Shown: one piece after another, positions 2,955-58,885 of the stretch
How positions within the stretch are numbered: position 1 is the stretch's first letter
Layout: every line of letters begins with the position of its first letter
NCBI RefSeq assembly: GCF_006345805.1
Contig: NC_042998.1
Span: 26,102,001 to 26,166,000, forward strand
Source of the DNA: Octopus sinensis
Lineage: Eukaryota
Reading direction: 5' to 3'
DNA: 64,000 nucleotides
The notes under the pieces: generated by a model
Told to the model about the DNA's origin: nothing
Databases searched by the model: none
The model's input: the letters and a program-made list of their open reading frames with translations, nothing else
Translations under genes and position numbers: made by a program

Positions 2955-3475
2955 TAGCTCCTGGCCTTGCCAGTTCCTGACATTGCCAGCTCCTGACCTT
3001 GGCAGTTCCTAGCCTAGTCAGCTCCTGGCCTTCCCAGCTCCTAGCCTAGCCAGCTCCTGGCCTTGCTAACTCCTGGCTTTGGTAGCTCCTGGCCTTGCCA
3101 GCTCCTGGCCTTGCCAGTTCCTGGCCTAGCCAGCTCCTGGCCTTGCCAGCTCTGGCTTCGCCAGCTCCTGGCCTTGCTAACTCCTGGCTTTGGTAGCTGC
3201 TGGCCTTGCCAGTTCCCGTCCTTGCCAGCTCCTGGCCTTGCCAGCTCCTGACCTTACCAGCTCCTGGCCTTGCCAGCTTCTGGCCTTGCTAGTTCCTGAC
3301 ATTGCCAGCTCCTGACCTTGGCAGTTCCTAGTCTAGCCAGCTCCTGGCCTTCCCAGCTCCTAGCCTAGCCAGCTCCTGGCCTTGCCAGCTCCTGACCTTA
3401 CCAGCTCCTGGGTTTGCCAGCTCCTGGCTTTGCCAGCTCCTGGCCTTGCTAACTCCTAGCTTTGGCAGCTCCTGT
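2955..3475 (+). repeat. 16-bp GC-rich minisatellite (consensus ccagctcctggccttg, ~32 copies) embedded in a family-B SINE
   Basis: Tandem ctcctggccttgccag units are visible directly. The flanks (gtggttggcatttggaagggtg.. upstream; tcctgtcagaccatc..gatgatgat downstream) are family-B SINE sequence. Confidence 0.9.
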
Positions 3476-3994
3476 CAGACCATCTGGCCCATGCCTGAAT
3501 GAAAAACAGATATTAAATAATGATGATCATGATCATGATGATTCCTAACGTAGGAACAAGATCAAAAACCTTTTAGTGGGGAGAGGGAACAGTTGATTAA
3601 ACTGACTCCAATTTTTGACTGATACTTATTTTATTGATCACTGTTCCCCATTTACTAACTTCAGTAGATTGCATTCATCATTTGCAAAGCAATCTTGTGA
3701 AGACGGCCAACAAGTGGGGCTTAGACAAGCATGTTACAGTTTCTACATGTAAGAAACAAGGAGACAAAATGAAAAAAAATATAGCAACGTTTAAAGCTAC
3801 AAATAGCCTATAGCTACAAATCTTTGGCGTTCCATCAAGAACGATGTCGTAGTGATACTGTTACAGATTTCTTTCCTAAGGATTTAAATGTTGAAAATGC
3901 AAAAAGACAGTGGGAATGGTAAAATAACGTATGATATTATTTAGACTTGCTGTTAAAGAACTACATAAATATCAAATGGAAATTGTAGTTGTGG

Positions 3995-4310
3995 TACTTG
4001 TGCCTGTGGCACGTAAAACGCACCATCCAAATGTGGCCGATGCCAGCACCGCCTTAACTGGCCTCCGTGCCGGTGGCACATAAAAAGCACCAACCAATCG
4101 TGGCCACTGCCAGCCTCTCCTGGCACCTGTGCCGGTGGCACGTAAAAAGCACCCACTACACTCACAGAGTGGTTGGCGGTAGGAAGGGCATCCAGCTGTA
4201 GAAACACTGCCAGATCAGACTGGAGCCAGGTGCAGCCTCCTGGCTTCCCACACCCCGGTCGAACCGTCCAACCCATGCTAGCATGGAAAACGCACGTTAA
4301 ACGATAATGA
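3995..4310 (+). mobile_element. SINE family B (GAT-tailed) copy
   Basis: Contains ggttggcggtaggaagggcatccagctgtagaaacactgccagatcagactgg..ccatgctagcatggaaaacgcacgttaaacgat, which recurs more than 10 times in the window. Confidence 0.85.
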
Positions 4311-7867: not shown

Positions 7868-8458
7868 ATATTTATTTCTTTATTGCCCACAGGGGGCTAA
7901 ACATAGAGGGGACAAACAAGGACGTCCAAAGGGATTAAGTTGATTACATTGACTCTAGTGTGTAACTGATACTTATTTAATCAACCACAAAAGGATGAAA
8001 GGCAAAGTCGACCTCGGCAGAATTTGAACTCAGAACATAACGGCAGATGAACTACCTATTTCTTTACTACCCACAAGGGGCTAAACACAGAGGGGACAAA
8101 CAAGGACAGACAAACGGATTAAGTCGATTACATTGACTCTAATGTGTAACTGATACTTATTTAATCAACCACAAAAGGATGAAAGGCAAAGTCGATCTCT
8201 GCAGAATTTGAACTCAGAATATAACGGCAGATGAAATACTTATTTCTTTACTACCCACAAGGGGCTAAACACAGAGGGGACAGACAAACGGATTAAGTTG
8301 ATTACATTGTCTCTAGTGTGTAACTGGTACTTATTTAATCAACCCCAAAAGGATTAATGGCGAAGTCGACCTCGGCAGAATTTGAACTCAGAACGTAATG
8401 GCAGACGAAAAACCACTTAAGCATTTTGCCAGCATGCTAATGATTCTGCTAGCTCACC
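7868..8458 (-). mobile_element. Family-C SINE as a head-to-tail trimer (~185-bp units, one head)
   Basis: Three consecutive tatttcttta..cccaca.ggggctaaac..aaaaggatgaaaggcaaagtcg..gaatttgaactcagaac blocks. Only the last continues into the tRNA-like head. Confidence 0.85.
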
Positions 8459-32710: not shown

Positions 32711-33172
32711 TGACTGGCATCCGTGCTAGTGAAGCACTAACAGCACCATCCGAGTGTGATCATTGCCAGAGCAGCTAACTGGCTTCTGTGCCGGTGGTGT
32801 GTAAAAAGCACCATTTGAGCGTGATCGTTACCTGCATCACCTTACTGGCACTTGTGCTGGTGGCACTTTAAAAAAACATTTGAGTGAGGTCGTTGCCAGA
32901 GCCGCTGGACTGGCTCCTGTGCAGGTGTTACATAAAAAGCACCTTTTGAGCGTGGCCATTGCCAGCACTGCCTGTCTGGCCCTCGTGCCGGTGGCATGTA
33001 AAAGCACCCACTACACTCTTGGAGTGGTTGGCATTAGGAAGGGCATCCAGCTGTAGAAACTCTGCCAGATCAGATTGGAGTCTGGTGCAGCCATCTGGTT
33101 CGCCAGACCTCAGTCAAATCGTCCAACCCATGCTAGCATGGAAAGCGGATGTTAAACGATGATGATGATGAT
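32711..33172 (+). mobile_element. SINE family B, long copy with internal tandem units
   Basis: Repeated gtaaaaagcaccatttgagcgtg units followed by the standard family-B 3' end and (GAT)n. Confidence 0.9.
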
Positions 33173-33232: not shown

Positions 33233-33443
33233 TAGTAAAGATTGTTTGCCAACATAACATGGCAGTCCTGGTTTAGGACGAATGTTGCTGTAATTTTGCC
33301 CCAGGAGACATTGTCTCCAGCTGGCTATACAACATGATCTGTGTCGTATAGCCAGCTGGAGACAATGTCTCCTGGGGCTAAATTACAGCAACATTCGTCC
33401 TAAACCAGGACTGCCATGTTATGTTGGTAAGCAATCTTTACTA
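33233..33443. mobile_element. ~210-bp near-perfect palindromic MITE-like element
   Basis: Arms of ~98 bp (tagtaaagattgtttgccaacataacatggcagtcctggtttaggacgaatgttgctg..ctccagctggctatac) around a ~15-nt loop, with very few mismatches. Confidence 0.9.
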
Positions 33444-34120
33444 TCATTTTGAAGTTGCAGAGCATGACTACCATTCTCTGCTCTTCCTTTTTTTTTTGTT
33501 TTGTTTTTTTTGGTAACTAATGTGGAAAATAATTGAAGTAGAATGTATCTATAACTTGCCCATGCGGAACAAAACTAATTATATTATCAACTTCATTGAT
33601 ATTCCCTATCACTCATATTTTCGGACACATAAATACATAAAAGATGCTTATGAAATATAACTCTTCTACCCATTAATGTGTGATAACTGAACTGGCACTT
33701 CATTAGTGGCATTGATGAGGGTTCCAGTTGGTTCAGTCAATGAAACATCCTGTTCATGAAATTAATGTGCACGTGGTTGAGTACTGCACAGATACACATA
33801 CCCTAAACATAGTTCTCAGGGACAATCAGCATGATACAGAATGTGACAAAAAGACTGGCCCCTTGAAATACAGGCACAACTCATTTTTGCTAGCTGTGTG
33901 GACTAGAGCAATGTGAAATAAAGTGTCTTGATCAAGGATGCAGTGTGCCACTGGGAATTGAACTCACAACCTTACGTCTGTGAACTAAATAGCCAAACCA
34001 TAAAGCAGCATGTTTTCACACTGATATGTGATATGATTTTGGTCAATAAGTGGAGAGAATACTTCATTCTTTGGGGAGAATTTTAGTTTCAAGTTTATTT
34101 TTGATTTAACACAAACTGAA

Positions 34121-34349
34121 TTAACCCTTTAGCATTCAGTTTATTCTGTCAAATGTAATGCTTATTTATTCATATTATTTTGAATTAATCATGCACTATC
34201 TTGTAGCTTTGAAATTTCGATTATGGGATTGTTAACTTTTAGCATGACATTGTAGGGTAGGTGTGAAAGGCAGGATTTAGCCAATTTGAGCATGAAACAA
34301 ACAGAACATTTTGGGCCGGATATAGCTATTTTAAATGCTAATGGGTTAA
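34121..34349. mobile_element. piggyBac-type MITE, intact
   Basis: TTAA at both ends and terminal inverted repeats ccctttagcatt / aatgctaatggg. Four copies occur in the window. Confidence 0.8.
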
Positions 34350-34424
34350 AAATAAAGATAAATAATTCATTTCTTTTTTTATGTGCAGAAAGAGTTCAAG
34401 CTTTTCTGTTCAAGCCATCATCAT

Positions 34425-37400
34425 GAGAGTAAATAAATGGAGGTGGTGAGGTAAGATGATCCATATGTATGCAATATTTGCCATCAGTAAAGGATCAGAA
34501 AAACCACAATGTGTTGTTTATAACAAACTTTGTCAAATGATTCCATGAAACCAATCAAGTTAAGGGCAACATTAGCAGAATGTTCGCCCTTAACACATGG
34601 ACAAGAGCAATAGACTTTTTGGACATATTGTTCTTGAAAAGATGAAACTGGATTTAACAGGGAAATACTAAGGAATAAAGTAAAAATTCTGTTGAAGTTT
34701 CTAATGTTGTGGCACAGGAGATTTCAAAGCAGAAAAAAAAAGCAACAACATGAAATTGAGGTCATTTGGATTAAACCTTGGGTTCTCAGAATGGTGGAAC
34801 TTGTATTGAGAATGGTTGGAAAAAAACCTTGTAACAGTTTCGCTATCAAACAGTATTGTTCACAGGAAGAGTGGTTACAGAGTCATTGACCTTAGGATCA
34901 AATTGTGCTGGAGACTAAAATTTAACTTGACTCAATGATGCATCATCATACTCCCAAGTTCTGGCATTTGTAAGAAATGTTTGCTTAGATTTATTTAAAG
35001 AGAAGTTTCACTTTTGTGCTCCTTCTGAAACAACTACCAAACTCTCAGGTGTTTTGGAAAAATCTTTATGGAATCAGAAAATCCAAACTCTCAGGTGTTT
35101 TGGAAAAGGATTTATGGAATCAGAAAATCCAAACTCTCAGGTGTTTTGGAAAAGGTTTTATGGAATCAGAAAATCCAAACTCTCAGGTATTTTGGAAAAG
35201 GCTTTATGGAATCAGAAAATCCAAACTCTCAGGTGTTTTGGAAAATGCTTTATGGAATCAGAAAATCCAAACTCTCAGGTGCTTTGGAAAAGGCTTTATG
35301 GAATCAGAAAATCCAAACTCTCAGGTGTTTTGGAAAAGGCTTTATGGAATCAGAAAATCCAAACTCTCAGGTGTTTTGGAAAAGGCTTTATGGAATCAGA
35401 AAATCCAAACTCTCAGGTGTTTTGGAAAAGGCTTTGTGGAATCAGAAAATCCAAACTCTCAGGTGTTTTGGAAAAGGCTTTATGGAATCAGAAAATCCAA
35501 ACTCTCAGGTGTTTTGGAAAAGGCTTTATGGAATCAGAAAATCCAAACTCTCAGGTGTTTTGGAAAAGGCTTTATGGAATCAGAAAATCCAAACTCTCAG
35601 GTGTTTTGGAAAATGCTTTGTGGAATCAGAAAATCCAAACTCTCAGGTGTTTTGGAAAAGGCTTTATGGAATCAGAAAATCCAAACTCTCAGGTGTTTTG
35701 GAAAATGCTTATGGAATCAGAAAATCCAAACTCTCAGGTGTTTTGGAAAGGATTTATGGAATCAGAAAATCCAAACTCTCAGGTGTTTTGGAAAAGGCTT
35801 TGTGGAATCAGAAAATCCAAACTCTCAGGTGTTTTGGAAAAGGCTTTATGGAATCAGAAAATCCAAACTCTCAGGTGTTTTGGAAAAGGCTTTATGGAAT
35901 CAGAAATCCAACTCCTCTGTGTTTTGGAAAAGGCTTTATGGAATCAGAAAATCCAAACTCTCAGGTGTTTTGGAAAAGGCTTTATGGAATCAGAAAATCC
36001 AACTCTCAGGTGTTTGGAAAATGCTTTATGGAATCAGAAAATCCAAACTCTCAGGTGTTTTGGAAAAGGATTTATGGAATCAGAAATCCAAACTCTCAGG
36101 TGTTTTGGAAAAGGCTTTATGGAATCAGAAAATCCAAACTCTCAGGTGTTTTGGAAAGGATTTATGGAATCAGAAAATCCAAACTCTCAGGTGTTTTGGA
36201 AAAGGATTTATGGAATCAGAAAATCCAACTCTCAGGTGTTTTGGAAAAGGATTTATGGAATCAGAAAATCCAAACTCTCAGGTGTTTGGAAAAGGATTTA
36301 TGGAATCAGAAATCCAAACTCTCAGGTGTTTTGGAAAAGGATTTATGGAATCAGAAAATCCAAACTCTCAGGTGTTTTGGAAAAGGCTTTATGGAATCAG
36401 AAAATACAAACTCTCAGGTGTTTTAGAAAAGGCCTTATGGAATCAGAAAATCCAAACTCTCAGGTGTTTTGGAAAAGGCTTTATTCAATCAGAAAATCCA
36501 AACTCTCAGGTGTTTTGGAAAAGGCTTTATGGAATCAGAAAATCCAAACTCTCAGGTGCTTTGGAAAAGGCTTTATTCAATCAGAAACTCTAAACTCTCA
36601 GGTGTTTTGGAAAAGGCCTTATGGAATCAGAAAATCCAAACTCTCAGGTGTTTTGGAAAAGGCTTTATGGAATCAGAAAATCCAAACTCTCAGGTGTTTT
36701 GGAAAAGGCCTTATGGAATCAGAAAATCCAAACTCTCAGGTGTTTTGGAAAAGGCTTTATGGAATCAGAAAATCCAAACTCTCAGGGGTTTGGAAAAGGC
36801 TTTATGCAATCAGAAAATCCAAACTCTCAGGTGTTTTGGAAAAGGCTTTATGGAATCAGAAAATCCAAACTCTCAGGTATTTTGGAAAAGGCTTTATGGA
36901 ATCAGAAAATCCAAACTCTCAGGTGTTTTGGAAAAGGATTTATGGAATCAGAAAATCCAAACTCTCAGGTGTTTTGGAAAAGGTTTTATGGAATCAGAAA
37001 ATCCAAACTCTCAGGTGTTTTGGAAAAGGTTTTATGGAATCAGAAAATCCAAACTCTCAGGTATTTTGGAAAAGGCTTTATGGAATCAGAAAATCCAAAC
37101 TCTCAGGTGTTTTGGAAAATGCTTTATGGAATCAGAAAATCCAAACTCTCAGGTATTTTGGAAAAGGCTTTATGGAATCAGAAAATCCAAACTCTCAGGT
37201 GTTTGGGAAAAGGATTTATGGAATCAGAAAATCCAAACTCTCAGGTGTTTTGGAAAAGTTTTATGGAATCAGAAAATCCAAACTCTCAGGTATTTTGGAA
37301 AAGGCTTTATGGAATCAGAAAATCCAAACTCTCAGGTGTTTTGAAAAGGCTTTATGGAATCAGAAAATCCAAACTCTCAGGTATTTTGGAAAAGGCTTTA

Positions 37401-40192
37401 TGGAATCAGAAAATCCAAACTCTCAGGTGTTTTGGAACAGGATTTATGGAATCAGAAAATCCAAACTCTCAGTGTTTTGGAAAGGTTTTATGGAATCAGA
37501 AAATCCAAACTCTCAGGTATTTTGGAAAAGGCTTTATGGAATCAGAAAATCCAAACTCTCAGGTTTTGGAAAAGGCTTTATGGAATCAGAAAATCCAAAC
37601 TCTCAGTTATTTTGGAAAAGGATTTATGGAATCAGAAAATCCAAACTCTCAGGTGTTTTGGAAAAGGTTTTATGGAATCAGAAAATCCAAACTCTCAGGT
37701 GTTTTGGAAAAGGCTTTATTCAATCAGAAAATCCAAACTCTTAGGTGTTTTGGAAAAGGCTTTATGGAATCAGAAAATCCAAACTCTCAGGTGTTTTGGA
37801 AAAGGATTTATGGAATCAGAAAATCCAAACTCTCAGGTATTTTGGAAAAGGTTTTATGGAATCAGAAAATCCAAACTCTCAGGTGTTTTGGAAAAGGATT
37901 TATGGAATCAGAAAATCCAAACTCTCAGGTGTTTTGGAAAAGGTTTTATGGAATCAGAAAATCCAAACTCTCAGGTATTTTGGAAAAGGCTTTATGGAAT
38001 CAGAAAATCCAAACTCTCAGGTGTTTTGGAAAAGGCTTTATGGAATCAGAAAATCCAAACTCTCAGGTATTTTGGAAAAGGCTTTATGGAATCAGAAAAT
38101 CCAAACTCTCAGGTGTTTTGGAACAGGATTTATGGAATCAGAAAATCCAAACTCTCAGGTGTTTTGGAAAAGGTTTTATGGAATCAGAAAATCCAAACTC
38201 TCAGGTATTTTGGAAAAGGCTTTATGGAATCAGAAAATCCAAACTCTCAGGTGTTTTGGAAAAGGCTTTATGGAATCAGAAAATCCAAACTCTCAGGTAT
38301 TTTGGAAAAGGATTTATGGAATCAGAAAATCCAAACTCTCAGGTGTTTTGGAAAAGGTTTTATGGAATCAGAAAATCCAAACTCTCAGGTGTTTTGGAAA
38401 ATGCTTTATGGAATCAGAAAATCCAAACTCTCAGGTGTTTTGGAAAAGGCTTTATAGAATCAGAAAATCCAAACTCTCAGGTGTTTTGGAAAAGGATTTA
38501 TGGAATCAGAAAATCCAAACTCTCAGGTATTTTGGAAAAGGTTTTATGGAATCAGAAAATCCAAACTCTCAGGTGTTTTGGAAAAGGATTTATGGAATCA
38601 GAAAATCCAAACTCTCAGGTGTTTTGGAAAAGGTTTTATGGAATCAGAAAATCCAAACTCTCAGGTGTTTTGGAAAAGGATTTATGGAATCAGAAAATCT
38701 AAACTCTCAGGTATTTTGGAAAAGGCTTTATGGAATCAGAAAATCCAAACTCTCAGGTGTTTTGGAAAAGGTTTTATGGAATCAGAAAATCCAAACTCTC
38801 AGGTGTTTTGGAAAAGGATTTATGGAATCAGAAAATCCAAACTCTCAGGTGTTTTGGAAAAGGTTTTATGGAATCAGAAAATCCAAACTCTCAGGTATTT
38901 TGGAAAAGGCTTTATGGAATCAGAAAATCCAAACTCTCAGGTGTTTTGGAAAAGGCTTTATGGAATCAGAAAATCCAAACTCTCAGGTGTTTTGGAAAAG
39001 GCTTTATGGAATCAGAAAATCCAAACTCTCAGGTGTTTTGGAAAAGGCTTTATGGAATCAGAAAATCCAAACTCTCAGGTGTTTTTGGAAAATGCTTTAT
39101 GGAATCGGAAAATCCAAACTCTCAGGTGTTTTGGAAAAGGCCTTATGGAATCGGAAAATCATCTGTGGGATGGTGCAATTGCTTTGCCTGGAACAAAATC
39201 TAGAAGTCAAGTTTGCTTAAAAAAAAGAAACCTTCAAGACGGAAAGATATTTACTGCATGATCAGGTGCCAGCTTCAAAAACATTTCCATCTCTTCTAGG
39301 AAATGTTTTCTGTCAAAACAATGCAAATTGGGAAGTTAATCAAATTGGAAACTTTCAAATTTTTAATCAGTTAAATATTGACAGTTTTGCAAAGATCATT
39401 TATGTCTTTACCATAAAAAATGTCCAATGGATTTCAAGTGGAAACATAACTGAAAGAATATTTGAACTTGGAGAGGATCTCAGTTTCTTTTTTCTTTTTT
39501 TTTTCATTCAGAGAAAGATGGAACTTTTTGTCTGGCTAAAAGATGAGGAAAGGATCAAAAACCTAGCCAGCTTGGTTGATATTATTGAGCAGCAGAATAA
39601 GCTATATTCAAATGCAAAGAATTAATAAAAACATCATAAAATGCAATGGTTCTTTGGAAGCTTTCATAAGCAAACTGAAAAATTGGAAAAGAGCGTATGA
39701 TCAATTTAAGAAACTGTCATCAATTCTTATTGTTAGTGGCAAAGACCAAAAGATGGAATTTTTCATCATCTGACAGCATTGGAAAATGAATTCAGCTGAT
39801 ATTTTCCTGAATTCAGAGATAAAGAGTTTAATATAGTGCAAAATCCATCTAAATTGTCAGTTGAAAAGTTCCTGAAGATTATCAAGATAAATTTCTGGAA
39901 CTGAAGAATGATTCAGAAGTAAGAGATATGTATGATGAGAAATCAATAAGAATTTCGGCCTTTGATGTGTTGTTTCTAAACAAATGTAGCAGAAAGAACT
40001 ATACATGTATTGTTTCTCTTTGTGTCGAAGTAACTTTGTGAGTCAAGCTTTCCGACTCTCTGGAAACTGAAAATGAAGTAATGAAGTAGATTGATTGGAA
40101 GTTGAAAACGACCCACATTATGTTCTTTCAAGCACACATCTTTGTATGCAAGGATTGGCAAAGAAAAAAAGCAATCATAAGTCTCTCATTGA
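34425..40192 (+). pseudogene. Decayed hAT-superfamily (Charlie/Buster, SCAND3/ZBED8-like) transposase interrupted by a satellite
   Basis: Frameshifted motifs occur in the expected order: KPQCVV..SNDSMKPIKL (BED finger); LD.S.D..SYSQVLAFVR; KEKFHFCAPSETTTK; [satellite]; DGAIALPG; WISSG..ERIFEL; WLKDEERIKNLASLVDI; AFISKLKNWK; ENEFS*YFPE; QDKFLELKNDS; LCESSFPTL..VEND..LSST..SH*. Confidence 0.85.
35038..39159 (+). repeat. 46-bp tandem satellite, ~90 copies (tttatggaatcagaaaatccaaactctcaggtgttttggaaaaggc)
   Basis: The ORF track shows a 46-aa period (three monomers). The monomer has no TAA/TAG/TGA on the plus strand. Confidence 0.98.
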
Positions 40193-40416
40193 CTGTAATC
40201 ATTATCAGAATAAAATGAATTAGAATAACCAGTCAGGGATTCTATTGAACTTTCGTTTGTTAAAGTATGCTTCACTCATATTATTTGGCCTCTCTAGTAA
40301 TTAATTATGAATGCAACATAAAATTCTTTTATTCCGAGTTTTAAAATCCCGCAACATTTTCAATTGCTACTAAATCTGTAAAACTACTTTATAAAAATAA
40401 TCCAAGTTTTCAATAT

Positions 40417-40833
40417 GGGCTGTGTGGTAAGTAGCTTGCTTACCAACCACATGGTTCCGGGTTCAGTTCCACTCTGTGGAACCTTGGGCAAGTGTCTTCT
40501 ACTATAGCCTCAGGCCAACCAAAGCCTTGTGAGTGGGTTTGGTAGATGGAAACTGAAAGAAGCCTGTCGTATATATATGTATATGTGTGTGTGTGTATGT
40601 GTGTGTGTGTGTGTGTTTGTGCGTCTGTGTTTGTCCCCCCCCCCATCCAACATCGCTTGACAACCAATGCTGGTGTGTTTATGTCCCCGTAACTTAGCGG
40701 TTCAGCAAATGAGACCAATAGAATAAGTACTAGGCTTACAAAGAATAAGTTCTGAGGTCGATTTGCTCGAGTAAAGGTGGTGCTCCAGCATGGCCACAGT
40801 CAAATGACTGAAACAAGTAAAAGAGTAAAGAGT
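40417..40833 (+). mobile_element. SINE family A, full length
   Basis: A-box-like ggctgtgtggtaag, B-box-like gggttcagttcc and a taaaagag tail. Confidence 0.9.
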
Positions 40834-44239: not shown

Positions 44240-44620
44240 CATCATCATCATCATCATTTAGCGTCCGCTTTCCATGCTAGCATGGGTTGGACGGGTCAAC
44301 TGGGGTCTGTGAAGCTGGAAGGCTACGTCAGGCCCAGTCAGATCTGGCAGTGTTTCTACGGCTGGATGCCCTTCCTAACGCCAACCACTCCGCGAGTGTA
44401 GTGGGTGCTTTTTACGTGCCACCTGCACAAACGGCCACGAACGGATGGTGCTTTTACATGTCACTGGCACGGGGGCCAGCTGAGGCTGGCAACGAACACG
44501 AACGGATGGTGCTTTTACGTGCCACCGACACGGGGTCAGACAGAGCTGGCAAACGGCCCTGAACGGACGGTGCTTTTACGTGTCACCGGCACGGGGGCCA
44601 GCCAAGGCTGGCAACGGACA
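44240..44620 (-). mobile_element. SINE family B with four internal tandem units
   Basis: catcatcatttagcgtccgctttccatgctagcatggg.. followed by repeated ggtgcttttacgtgccacc units. Confidence 0.9.
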
Positions 44621-58077: not shown

Positions 58078-58885
58078 ACTGTGTGGTAAGAAGTTTGCTT
58101 CCCAACTACATGGTTCTGGGTTCAGTCCTACTGTGAGGTATCTTGGGTAAGTGTCATCTACTATGGCCTCGGGTCAACCAAAGCCTTGCGAGTGGATTTG
58201 GTAGATGGAAAAACTAAAAGAAACTATTTACCCCCACAACCATCACTTGACACCGATGTTGGTATGCTCATGTCCCCATAACTTAGTGGTTCGGCAAAAG
58301 AACCGATAGAATAAGTTCTAGGCTTACAAAGAATAAGTACTGGGGCCGATTTGTTCAACTAAAGGTGGTGCTCCAGCATGGCCGCAGTCAAATGACTGAA
58401 ACAAATAAAAGAAGAAAAGAATATGTATGTATTGGTAAGTCTATGCTTGTCGCTCCCAGACACACACACCATCACTTGACAACCAGTGTTGGAGTGTTTA
58501 TGTCCCTGTAACTTAGCGGTTTGGCAAAAAGGACCGATAGAATAAGTACTAGGCTTACAAAGAATAAGTCCTGGGTTGATTTGATCAACTAAAGGTGGTA
58601 CTCCAGCATGGCCACAGTCAAATGACTGAAACAAGTAAAGCAATAAAACAATATGCATGTATTTGTGAGTGTGTGTTTGTCACCCCCACACACACACCAT
58701 CGCTTGACAACCAGTGATGGTGTGTTTACATCCCCGTAACTTAGCAGTTTGGCAAAAGAGATCGATAGAATAAGTACTAGGCTTAAAAAGAATAAGTCCT
58801 GGGGGCGATTTGTCCGACTAAAGGTGGTGTTCCAGCATGGCCACGGTCAAATGACTGAAACAAATAAAATAGATAAAAGAAATAA
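58078..58885 (+). mobile_element. Family-A SINE with one head and three tandem 3' bodies (~225-bp period)
   Basis: caccatc.cttgaca.cc..gtaacttagc..gatagaataagt..ctccagcatggcc..aatgactgaaacaa occurs three times. Confidence 0.85.

What the first reader, a model, noticed from the sequence alone, without database searches (positions are those of the whole stretch)
34425..40192. A 4.1-kb satellite born in place from a hAT transposase coding segment
The transposase reads ..KEKFHFCAPSETTTK-LSGVLEK.. into the array and ..GFMESEN-HLWDGAIALPG.. out of it. The monomer encodes exactly these junction peptides (TKLSGVLEK / FMESEN). They correspond to the F(C)..LETTTK..DV.EK...F.SE.L.W...CTDGA stretch of Charlie/Buster-type transposases, between the first catalytic Asp motif (LDESTD) and the DGA motif. 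The array is therefore a ~90-fold amplification of 46 bp of the element's own CDS, with both original flanks still attached. The monomers are far more homogeneous than the flanking transposase is intact, implying a recent or homogenised expansion in an old dead element. It is an unusually clean snapshot of satellite birth.
Basis: partly seen in the sequence, partly recalled or inferred. Interest (0 to 1): 0.7.

Follow-up and report, generated by a model that had tools for sequence, protein, structure and literature searches.

The report
Minisatellite amplified from dead hAT transposase
A 46-bp piece of the coding sequence of a long-dead hAT (Buster/ZBED5-type) transposon has been copied head-to-tail 90 times where it lay; this is a very clean but not surprising example of how transposon remnants seed tandem repeats.

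Summary
A 46-bp unit is repeated 90.0 times at 35037-39159 (95% matches) and occurs nowhere else in the window. The DNA on both sides is one decayed Buster/ZBED5-type hAT transposase gene, about 34437-40192, with 11-13 stops and 19-24 frameshifts. It is collinear over its whole length with intact relatives.

The unit is the element's own coding segment. It encodes (T)KLSGVLEK + FMESEN, against family TTKAxDIxEKVSxFFESEN. Restoring exactly one unit maximises the alignment to the three closest intact transposases, and none of 240 shuffled or random 46-mers per protein does as well (z about 6). The collapsed element then aligns to an intact element's DNA as a single 1.7-kb match (E 1.8e-141) running straight through the unit. 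A foreign satellite inserted here is excluded.

- On present evidence this is a single-locus minisatellite, not a demonstrated satellite.
- Whether the array arose in this copy or in a parental copy could not be tested, because no host genome was available.
- The host organism was not verified.

Tandem repeats derived from transposons, including from their coding regions, are well documented, so this is a new member of a known kind. Interest is modest.

The parts
34437..35036 (+). N-terminal part of a decayed Buster/ZBED5-type hAT transposase gene. It runs from the BED-like zinc-finger region through the degenerate ..LD.S.D.. block (first catalytic Asp) to ..FCAPSETTT(K).
   Evidence: Frameshift-aware alignment to P0007 (Xenopus tropicalis ZBED5) starts at the ATG at 34437-34439. 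Alignment to P0060 starts at about 34455. Unguided tblastn places P0060 aa 24-128 at 34492-34808 and aa 182-223 at 34937-35062, E 2.7e-7. Six stops and seven frameshifts fall in this part.
35037..39159 (+). Array of 90 head-to-tail copies of the 46-bp unit CCAAACTCTCAGGTGTTTTGGAAAAGGCTTTATGGAATCAGAAAAT. The unit reads cc(T) KLSGVLEK, then a 2-nt remnant 'GC', then FMESEN.
   Evidence: Variation is concentrated at unit positions 15 (G74/A16), 26 (G81/T7) and 28 (C56/A20/T14). Short multi-unit blocks recur: 37779-37962 matches 38469-38652, and 37871-38054 matches 38791-38974.
35037..35082 (+). First unit, joined to the left flank. It carries a private change (GG to AT at unit positions 26-27).
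   Evidence: The tblastn match of the left flank runs 26 nt into this unit.
39067..39159 (+). Last two units, joined to the right flank. They share a private A to G change at unit position 40, and the first of them has a 1-nt insertion.
   Evidence: The right-flank tblastn match (P0060 aa 230-263) starts at 39151, 9 nt before the end of the last unit.
39160..40192 (+). C-terminal part of the same transposase pseudogene: HLW, an 8-codon deletion, DGAIALPGTKS.., then the insertion domain, the hAT dimerisation region (..LCESSFPTLWKLKMK..) and the TGA stop at 40190-40192.
   Evidence: tblastn places P0060 aa 273-565 at 39251-40093 and aa 565-589 at 40095-40169, E 4.5e-38. A representative search with the stop-free 134-aa stretch 39221-39622 gave 24 hits, the best at E 7.8e-12. 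Five stops and eleven frameshifts fall in this part.
39166..39171 (+). Site of a 24-nt in-frame deletion between TGG (W) and GAT (D of DGA). It removed the family's ..[DE]N[IV]CG.CT.. codons.
   Evidence: Family alignment and the DNA alignment to L001 and L005.

Best explanation
A Buster/ZBED5-type hAT transposon inserted here and died. A 46-bp stretch of its transposase coding sequence was then duplicated in tandem and expanded to 90 copies. The stretch begins inside the Thr codon of ..TTK.. and ends after the Asn codon of ..ESEN.., between the first and second catalytic-Asp blocks. The two halves of the gene remain attached to the two ends of the array.

Shown:
- The flanks are collinear halves of one transposase gene.
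- The unit is the segment missing between them.
- One unit, not zero and not two, restores the gene.
- Every unit carries the same 7-nt deletion (a frameshift) relative to intact relatives.
- The array is homogeneous, its variants occur in blocks, and its end units carry private changes.

Inferred:
- The first duplication arose by replication slippage or end-joining with at most 1 nt of microhomology. The base after the last unit, C at 39160, equals the first base of the unit, and there is no longer flanking direct repeat.
- Growth and homogenisation occurred by unequal sister-chromatid exchange, slippage or gene conversion.
- Amplification, or the last homogenisation, came well after the gene had stopped being functional.
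- The array is a neutral by-product with no function.
For: The array itself is documented.

Flanks as hAT: the stretch 39221-39622 hits 24 proteins. One is P0007, Xenopus tropicalis ZBED5, which carries Pfam Dimer_Tnp_hAT at 32 bits against a cut-off of 21.4. Unguided tblastn of P0007 and P0060 places successive protein segments in order on both flanks.

Whole-gene collinearity: P0060 aligns over aa 7-589 at 49% identity with 19 frameshifts and 11 stops. P0007 aligns over aa 1-592 at 37% identity.

Unit as the missing CDS segment: window FCAPSETTTK LSGVLEK--/FMESEN HLW aligns with P0063 FCSRLEKTTKAVDIFEKVSSFFESENLLW and the 98-sequence family consensus. Scores with 0, 1 and 2 units are 190/248/243 for P0060, 176/229/225 for P0063 and 149/204/201 for P0059. 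None of 120 shuffled plus 120 random 46-mers per protein reaches the one-unit score, z about 6.

DNA level: the one-unit reconstruction aligns to the intact element L001 as a single 1716-column match at 66.7% identity, E 1.8e-141, spanning the unit. In L005 the sequence GAATCAGAAAAT|CTTTTGTGGGA is contiguous, where the window has GAATCAGAAAAT|CATCTGTGGGA at the array's right edge.

Precedent: 23% of human mini/satellites derive from TEs and expand by local duplication (PMC3389668). Satellites derived from TE ORFs are listed in PMC9659126.
Against: - Pfam finds no family directly in the window's translation, even after frameshift correction. hAT membership therefore rests on homology to intact proteins.
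- No terminal inverted repeats or 8-bp target-site duplication could be found.
- With the more distant homologues P0018 and P0036 the gain from one unit is not significant; 10-17 of 150 controls reach it.
- The right junction has a second possible reading. GAA AAT c ATC TGT GGG gives ENICG, matching the family's [DE]N[IV]CG. The exact deletion history next to the array is therefore ambiguous, although both readings keep the flank collinear.
- Single-locus status and origin in this particular copy are untested. The monomer searches that returned nothing were in collections that do not hold the host genome.
- Many of the 19 indels in the array are 1-nt losses in A or T runs and may be long-read assembly errors.
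Confidence: 0.85

Rival explanations
1. The tandem duplication arose in a parental, possibly non-autonomous, copy of this hAT family and spread by transposition. On this view the array is a family feature that has expanded here, not something born at this locus.
For: Some TE-derived tandem repeats exist in the source element and propagate with it; LTR12 is an example in PMC3389668. Nothing here could test other copies, because no other copy of the element lies in the window and no host genome was available.
Against: No protein in 5.8 billion clusters resembles the array's translation, although all three forward frames are open. The unit carries a frameshift and the element has no recognisable ends, so there is no sign that it was recently mobile. 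A 4-kb internal array would more than double the ~3-kb length of the intact relative L001 (TIR to TIR), and mobilisation efficiency may fall for longer elements (general knowledge, not tested).
Confidence: 0.1
2. An unrelated satellite was inserted into, or recombined into, a hAT pseudogene. The unit's apparent reading as transposase peptides would then be coincidence.
For: None positive.
Against: An insertion would leave the gene complete on either side. Instead, the codons missing between the flanks are those the unit encodes, and one unit restores a single uninterrupted DNA alignment to an intact element. None of 240 control 46-mers per protein matches the score. The unit's last 12 nt and the right flank are contiguous in L005.
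Confidence: 0.02
3. The array, or its length, is an assembly artefact, with a much shorter repeat mis-expanded or collapsed by the assembler.
For: Clusters of 1-nt homopolymer deletions at 35681-36313 and 37233-37594 look like long-read consensus errors, so this region was probably hard to polish.
Against: The units carry structured variation at three polymorphic sites, arranged in non-periodic blocks. Both junctions are clean and in register with the gene. An artefact would not produce this.
Confidence: 0.03

Closest known systems
TE-derived minisatellites and satellites formed by local duplication inside an inserted element (human survey, Ahmed and Liang 2012, PMC3389668)
   Same: Part of a TE is duplicated in tandem after insertion and then expands by local duplication of units, with the remaining TE sequence flanking the array. 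That is the architecture seen here.
   Different: Most human cases have only 2-3 units and come from retroelements (Alu, L1, LTR). This one has 90 units and comes from a DNA transposon's coding sequence. The two initiation signatures discussed there do not fit: there is no 5-20-bp flanking direct repeat and no truncated terminal unit, only 1 nt of microhomology and a whole number of units.
Satellite DNAs derived from TE open reading frames, as tabulated in Zattera and Bruschi 2022 (PMC9659126). Examples: PROsat from LINE-1 ORF2, HinfI/CR1 from ORF2, rye E3900 from gag, and Chenopodium CficCl-61-40 from the Tnp2 transposase of the CACTA-like element Jozin.
   Same: The repeat unit descends from TE coding sequence rather than from TIRs, LTRs or UTRs. 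The CACTA case is likewise from a class II transposase gene.
   Different: Those are abundant, dispersed or heterochromatic satellites whose progenitor locus is no longer visible. Here a single array still sits inside its progenitor gene with both flanks attached, and abundance elsewhere is unknown. The superfamily (hAT) is also different.
Expansion of pre-existing internal tandem repeats of DNA transposons, such as Tetris in Drosophila virilis (PMC4079207), and DINE-1/Helitron central repeats and MITE-like elements in bivalves, as reviewed in PMC9659126
   Same: A class II element provides the seed for a tandem array.
   Different: In those cases the element already carries internal repeats that are part of its structure. 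Intact relatives of this element carry the segment once, so the first duplication was a new event in a unique coding sequence.

Membership tests
hAT superfamily, Buster/ZBED5-like branch (transposase pseudogene) | Transposase homologous over its full length to known hAT transposases | tested here: met
   The window is collinear with P0060 (aa 7-589, 49% identity) and with X. tropicalis ZBED5 P0007 (aa 1-592, 37%). Unguided tblastn gives E 4.5e-38 for the right flank and 2.7e-7 for the left. blastn to the intact element L001 gives E 1.8e-141.
hAT superfamily, Buster/ZBED5-like branch (transposase pseudogene) | C-terminal hAT dimerisation domain (Pfam PF05699) detectable in the sequence itself | tested here: not met
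   Pfam finds no family in either stitched translation. The homologous stretch ..FVSK*LCESSFPTLWKLKMK.. aligns to the PF05699 region of P0060, which scores 33 bits against a cut-off of 21.4. The domain is present only as a decayed remnant.
hAT superfamily, Buster/ZBED5-like branch (transposase pseudogene) | Catalytic DDE blocks in order (..DESTD.., ..CTDGA.., C-terminal E) | tested here: inconclusive
   Remnants I*LD-SNDASS and DGAIALPG align to the family's LDESTD and CTDGAPAMLG. The codons CT before DGA are deleted and the first block contains a stop. Assigning the catalytic residues to these blocks is established knowledge of hAT transposases and was not tested here.
hAT superfamily, Buster/ZBED5-like branch (transposase pseudogene) | Short terminal inverted repeats and an 8-bp target-site duplication | tested here: not met
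   The intact relative L001 has CAGGGGTTCTCA / TGAGAACCCCTG. Nothing similar lies near the window's element. A TIR plus TSD scan of 33950-34460 against 40150-40420 gave only chance-level pairs. The ends are probably eroded or interrupted by other repeats.
Minisatellite (VNTR-type tandem repeat) | Unit of about 10-100 bp in a head-to-tail array of about 0.5-30 kb at a defined locus | tested here: met
   The unit is 46 bp and occurs 90 times over 4123 bp in one locus of the window.
Satellite DNA | High genomic abundance: long arrays, usually at many or heterochromatic loci | not testable with these tools
   No collection here holds the host genome. Searches for the unit in metagenome and prokaryote contigs and in protein databases returned nothing, which is uninformative on this point.
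TE-derived tandem repeat formed in situ | The unit maps once to the TE, collinear with TE sequence on both flanks | tested here: met
   

The most novel reading that the evidence does not exclude
This locus is the still-recognisable progenitor of a satellite family that has already spread to other sites, perhaps heterochromatic or centromeric, in the host genome. That would make it a rare case where a satellite's birthplace, its source gene and its first array are all preserved.
Probability: 0.06. Interest if true: 0.6.

Novelty: new member of a known kind. Interest (0 to 1): 0.3.

Why it matters
[quoted passage not shown] Here both junctions, the source gene and intact relatives are available. 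The boundaries of the first duplication can therefore be read to the base: a whole number of units, at most 1 nt of microhomology, and no flanking direct repeat. That makes this a useful worked example for models of repeat initiation, since the two classical models account for only 6% of human TE-derived cases (PMC3389668). It is also a candidate hypervariable marker. In practice the array is open in all three forward frames, with ORFs up to 896 aa, so it could be mis-annotated as a repetitive protein gene. It does not change what is known about how such repeats arise.

Tried and rejected
- A hand-stitched 561-aa pseudo-protein gave no Pfam, PDB or word-indexed homology hits. The cause was decay plus low-complexity words, not absence of homology. 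An exhaustive search with a stop-free 134-aa stretch then opened the family.
- I suspected that the right flank 39161-39205 was itself a degenerate unit (GCTTTGCCTGGAACAAAATC against GCTTTATGGAATCAGAAAATC), which would have undermined the clean junction. I rejected this because that stretch aligns to the family's ..GAPAMLGTKS.. codons in intact elements.
- P0009, a protein of tandem 51-aa units among the hits, looked like a second amplified transposase piece. It does not match a 98-sequence family HMM, so I treat the hit as spurious and inflated by its repeats.
- I found no strict higher-order repeat, only slightly lower distances at lags 5, 15 and 20 and two 4-unit block repeats.
- Exact look-ups of the array's ORFs, a protein search with the array's translation and monomer scans of the metagenome and prokaryote collections all returned nothing.
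- Rfam found nothing in the window.
Full report
**The array**

Tandem Repeats Finder reports one array at 35037-39160: period 46, 90.0 copies, 95% matches, 1% indels, score 7467. It is the strongest array in the window by a wide margin; the next scores 909. The consensus CCAAACTCTCAGGTGTTTTGGAAAAGGCTTTATGGAATCAGAAAAT matches 77 times within three mismatches. All matches are on the + strand inside 35037-39159, against none expected by chance. Neither the unit nor the flanks recur elsewhere in the 64 kb.

Segmentation gives 90 units, 19 of them identical to the consensus. The mean difference is 1.21 per unit (2.6%) to the consensus and 4.6% pairwise. Variation is concentrated at unit positions 15 (G/A), 26 (G/T) and 28 (C/A/T). 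There is no strict higher-order period, but short multi-unit blocks recur. The first unit and the last two units carry private changes. Nineteen indel events, mostly 1-nt losses in A or T runs, cluster in two stretches and may partly be long-read errors.

**The flanks**

My first attempts failed. A hand-stitched translation found nothing in Pfam, in the word-indexed protein search or in the PDB. An exhaustive HMMER search with the stop-free 134-aa stretch 39221-39622 then gave 24 hits, the best at E 7.8e-12. One is P0007, which is Xenopus tropicalis ZBED5 and carries the hAT dimerisation domain above Pfam's cut-off.

Searching with P0007 returned 120 full-length ZBED5/ZBED8/FAM200/SCAND3-like proteins. 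The closest to the window are P0060, P0059 and P0063. Unguided tblastn places P0060 in order on both flanks:
- aa 24-128 at 34492-34808
- aa 182-223 at 34937-35062
- aa 230-263 at 39151-39228
- aa 273-565 at 39251-40093
- aa 565-589 at 40095-40169

The right side scores E 4.5e-38.

I wrote a frameshift-aware protein-to-DNA alignment and ran it on the flanks joined through one unit. It is collinear with P0060 over aa 7-589, at 49% identity with 19 frameshifts and 11 stops. It is collinear with P0007 over aa 1-592, at 37% identity. The flanks are therefore the two halves of one dead Buster/ZBED5-type hAT transposase gene. It runs from an ATG at 34437 to the TGA at 40190-40192.

Pfam still finds nothing in the corrected translation. 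No terminal inverted repeats or target-site duplication could be found. The intact relative L001 has CAGGGGTTCTCA termini.

**The unit is the gene's own missing segment**

At the junction the family reads ..F[KL]EEFLFC..LE.TTKA.D[IV].EKVS.FFESENL.W[DE]N[IV]CG.CTDGAPAMLG.KSGFQ. The window reads FKEKFHFCAPSETTTK | LSGVLEK, then a 2-nt remnant, then FMESEN | HLW, then an 8-codon deletion, then DGAIALPGTKSRSQ.

The unit starts at the second base of the last Thr codon and ends after the Asn codon. It contains 8 + 6 codons around a 7-nt deletion that is present in all 90 units. P0063 has FFESENLLW where the window has FMESEN|HLW.

Alignment scores for the three closest proteins, with 0, 1 or 2 units placed between the flanks:

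| Protein | 0 units | 1 unit | 2 units |
|---|---|---|---|
| P0060 | 190 | 248 | 243 |
| P0063 | 176 | 229 | 225 |
| P0059 | 149 | 204 | 201 |

None of 120 shuffled and 120 random 46-mers per protein reaches the one-unit score, z about 6. With P0007 no control out of 300 reaches it, z about 4. With the more distant P0018 and P0036 the gain is not significant. A 98-sequence family HMM aligns the left flank plus one unit through profile positions 182-223 at 25 bits.

**DNA-level confirmation**

P0060 is encoded by intact elements of about 3 kb on marine-metagenome contigs (L001-L004). P0063 is encoded on L005. The one-unit reconstruction aligns to L001 as a single match of 1716 columns at 66.7% identity, E 1.8e-141, passing straight through the unit. 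In L005 GAATCAGAAAAT|CTTTTGTGGGA is contiguous, where the window has GAATCAGAAAAT|CATCTGTGGGA at the right edge of the array. These results exclude insertion of a foreign satellite.

**Mechanism**

Shown:
- One dead transposase gene is split by an array of its own 46-bp segment.
- The array holds a whole number of units plus 1 nt of ambiguity (C at 39160).
- There is no flanking direct repeat.
- All units share a frameshifting deletion.
- Variants occur in blocks, and the end units carry private changes.

Inferred:
- An initial tandem duplication arose by slippage or end-joining.
- Growth and homogenisation followed by unequal exchange, slippage or conversion.
- Amplification, or the last homogenisation, came well after inactivation. 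The array differs 2.6% from its consensus, while the roughly 1.7 kb of flanks hold 11-13 stops and 19-24 frameshifts. That contrast is qualitative, because no family consensus from the host was available.
- I assume no function.

**What could not be tested**

No collection here holds the host genome. The unit's absence from metagenome and prokaryote contigs and from protein databases therefore says nothing about other loci. The array could have arisen in a parental copy, and I give that about 10%. The host organism was not verified.

**Comparison with known cases**

About 23% of human mini/satellites derive from TEs and expand by local duplication (PMC3389668). A review lists satellites derived from TE ORFs, including one from a CACTA transposase gene (PMC9659126). 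This is a new and unusually legible member of a known kind. On present evidence it is a minisatellite rather than a satellite.

Noticed in passing
window 33233-33443: A large near-perfect hairpin about 1 kb upstream of the hAT remnant: two 102-nt arms, 96% complementary, separated by 7 nt. It looks like a foldback or MITE-like element.
   Followed up: partly
window 35016-39261: The array has no stop codon in any of the three forward frames over long stretches, giving mechanical ORFs of up to 896 aa (35054-37744). I roughly estimate this is within chance for a 46-bp AT-rich unit partly inherited from an ORF. It is a hazard for gene annotation. No such protein is on record.
   Followed up: partly
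window 39160-39180: Next to the array the DNA reads in two frames like two different parts of the family motif: HLW..DGA in one frame and ENICG (family [DE]N[IV]CG) in another. Intact relatives have similar DNA for ..ENLLWD.. and ..DNICG.. (L001). The 24-nt deletion may therefore have occurred between two short near-repeats.
   Followed up: partly
window 35681-36313 and 37233-37594: Single-base deletions in A and T runs of the unit cluster in these two stretches. They may be long-read consensus errors rather than real variants.
   Followed up: no
window 58235-58869, 7873-8414 and 40640-40800: There are short tandem arrays of long units: 230 bp x 2.8 and 184 bp x 3.0. The 230-bp consensus resembles the dispersed SINE-like sequence just downstream of the hAT remnant (..GACAACCA.TG.TGGTGTGTTTATGTCCCCGTAACTTAGCGGTT..). 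Another dispersed repeat in this genome therefore also forms small tandem arrays.
   Followed up: no
window 32742-33008, 3992-4153 and 44430-44620: Three short arrays of 61-67-bp units share a motif (..GTGCCGGTGGCA.GTAAAA.GCACC..). This suggests a dispersed element with internal tandem repeats.
   Followed up: no
window 2956-3474: A second minisatellite: 16-bp unit AGCTCCTGGCCTTGCC, 32.5 copies, 79% matches.
   Followed up: no
L005 3-2110 and 5046-7652 (ENA contig ctg13653l): The intact relative encoding P0063 sits inside a 491-bp satellite array that continues on both sides of it. This is the reverse relationship, a hAT inserted into a satellite.
   Followed up: partly
P0024 (Phaedon cochleariae CAG9822185.1): This beetle gene model has three tandem units of about 94 aa. 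These are joined to a Buster-type transposase that begins only at ..ENLVWENLCGCCTNGAPAML.., profile position 230. That is almost the same point where the window's array ends. The repeats themselves do not match the transposase family. This may be coincidence or a chimeric gene model.
   Followed up: partly
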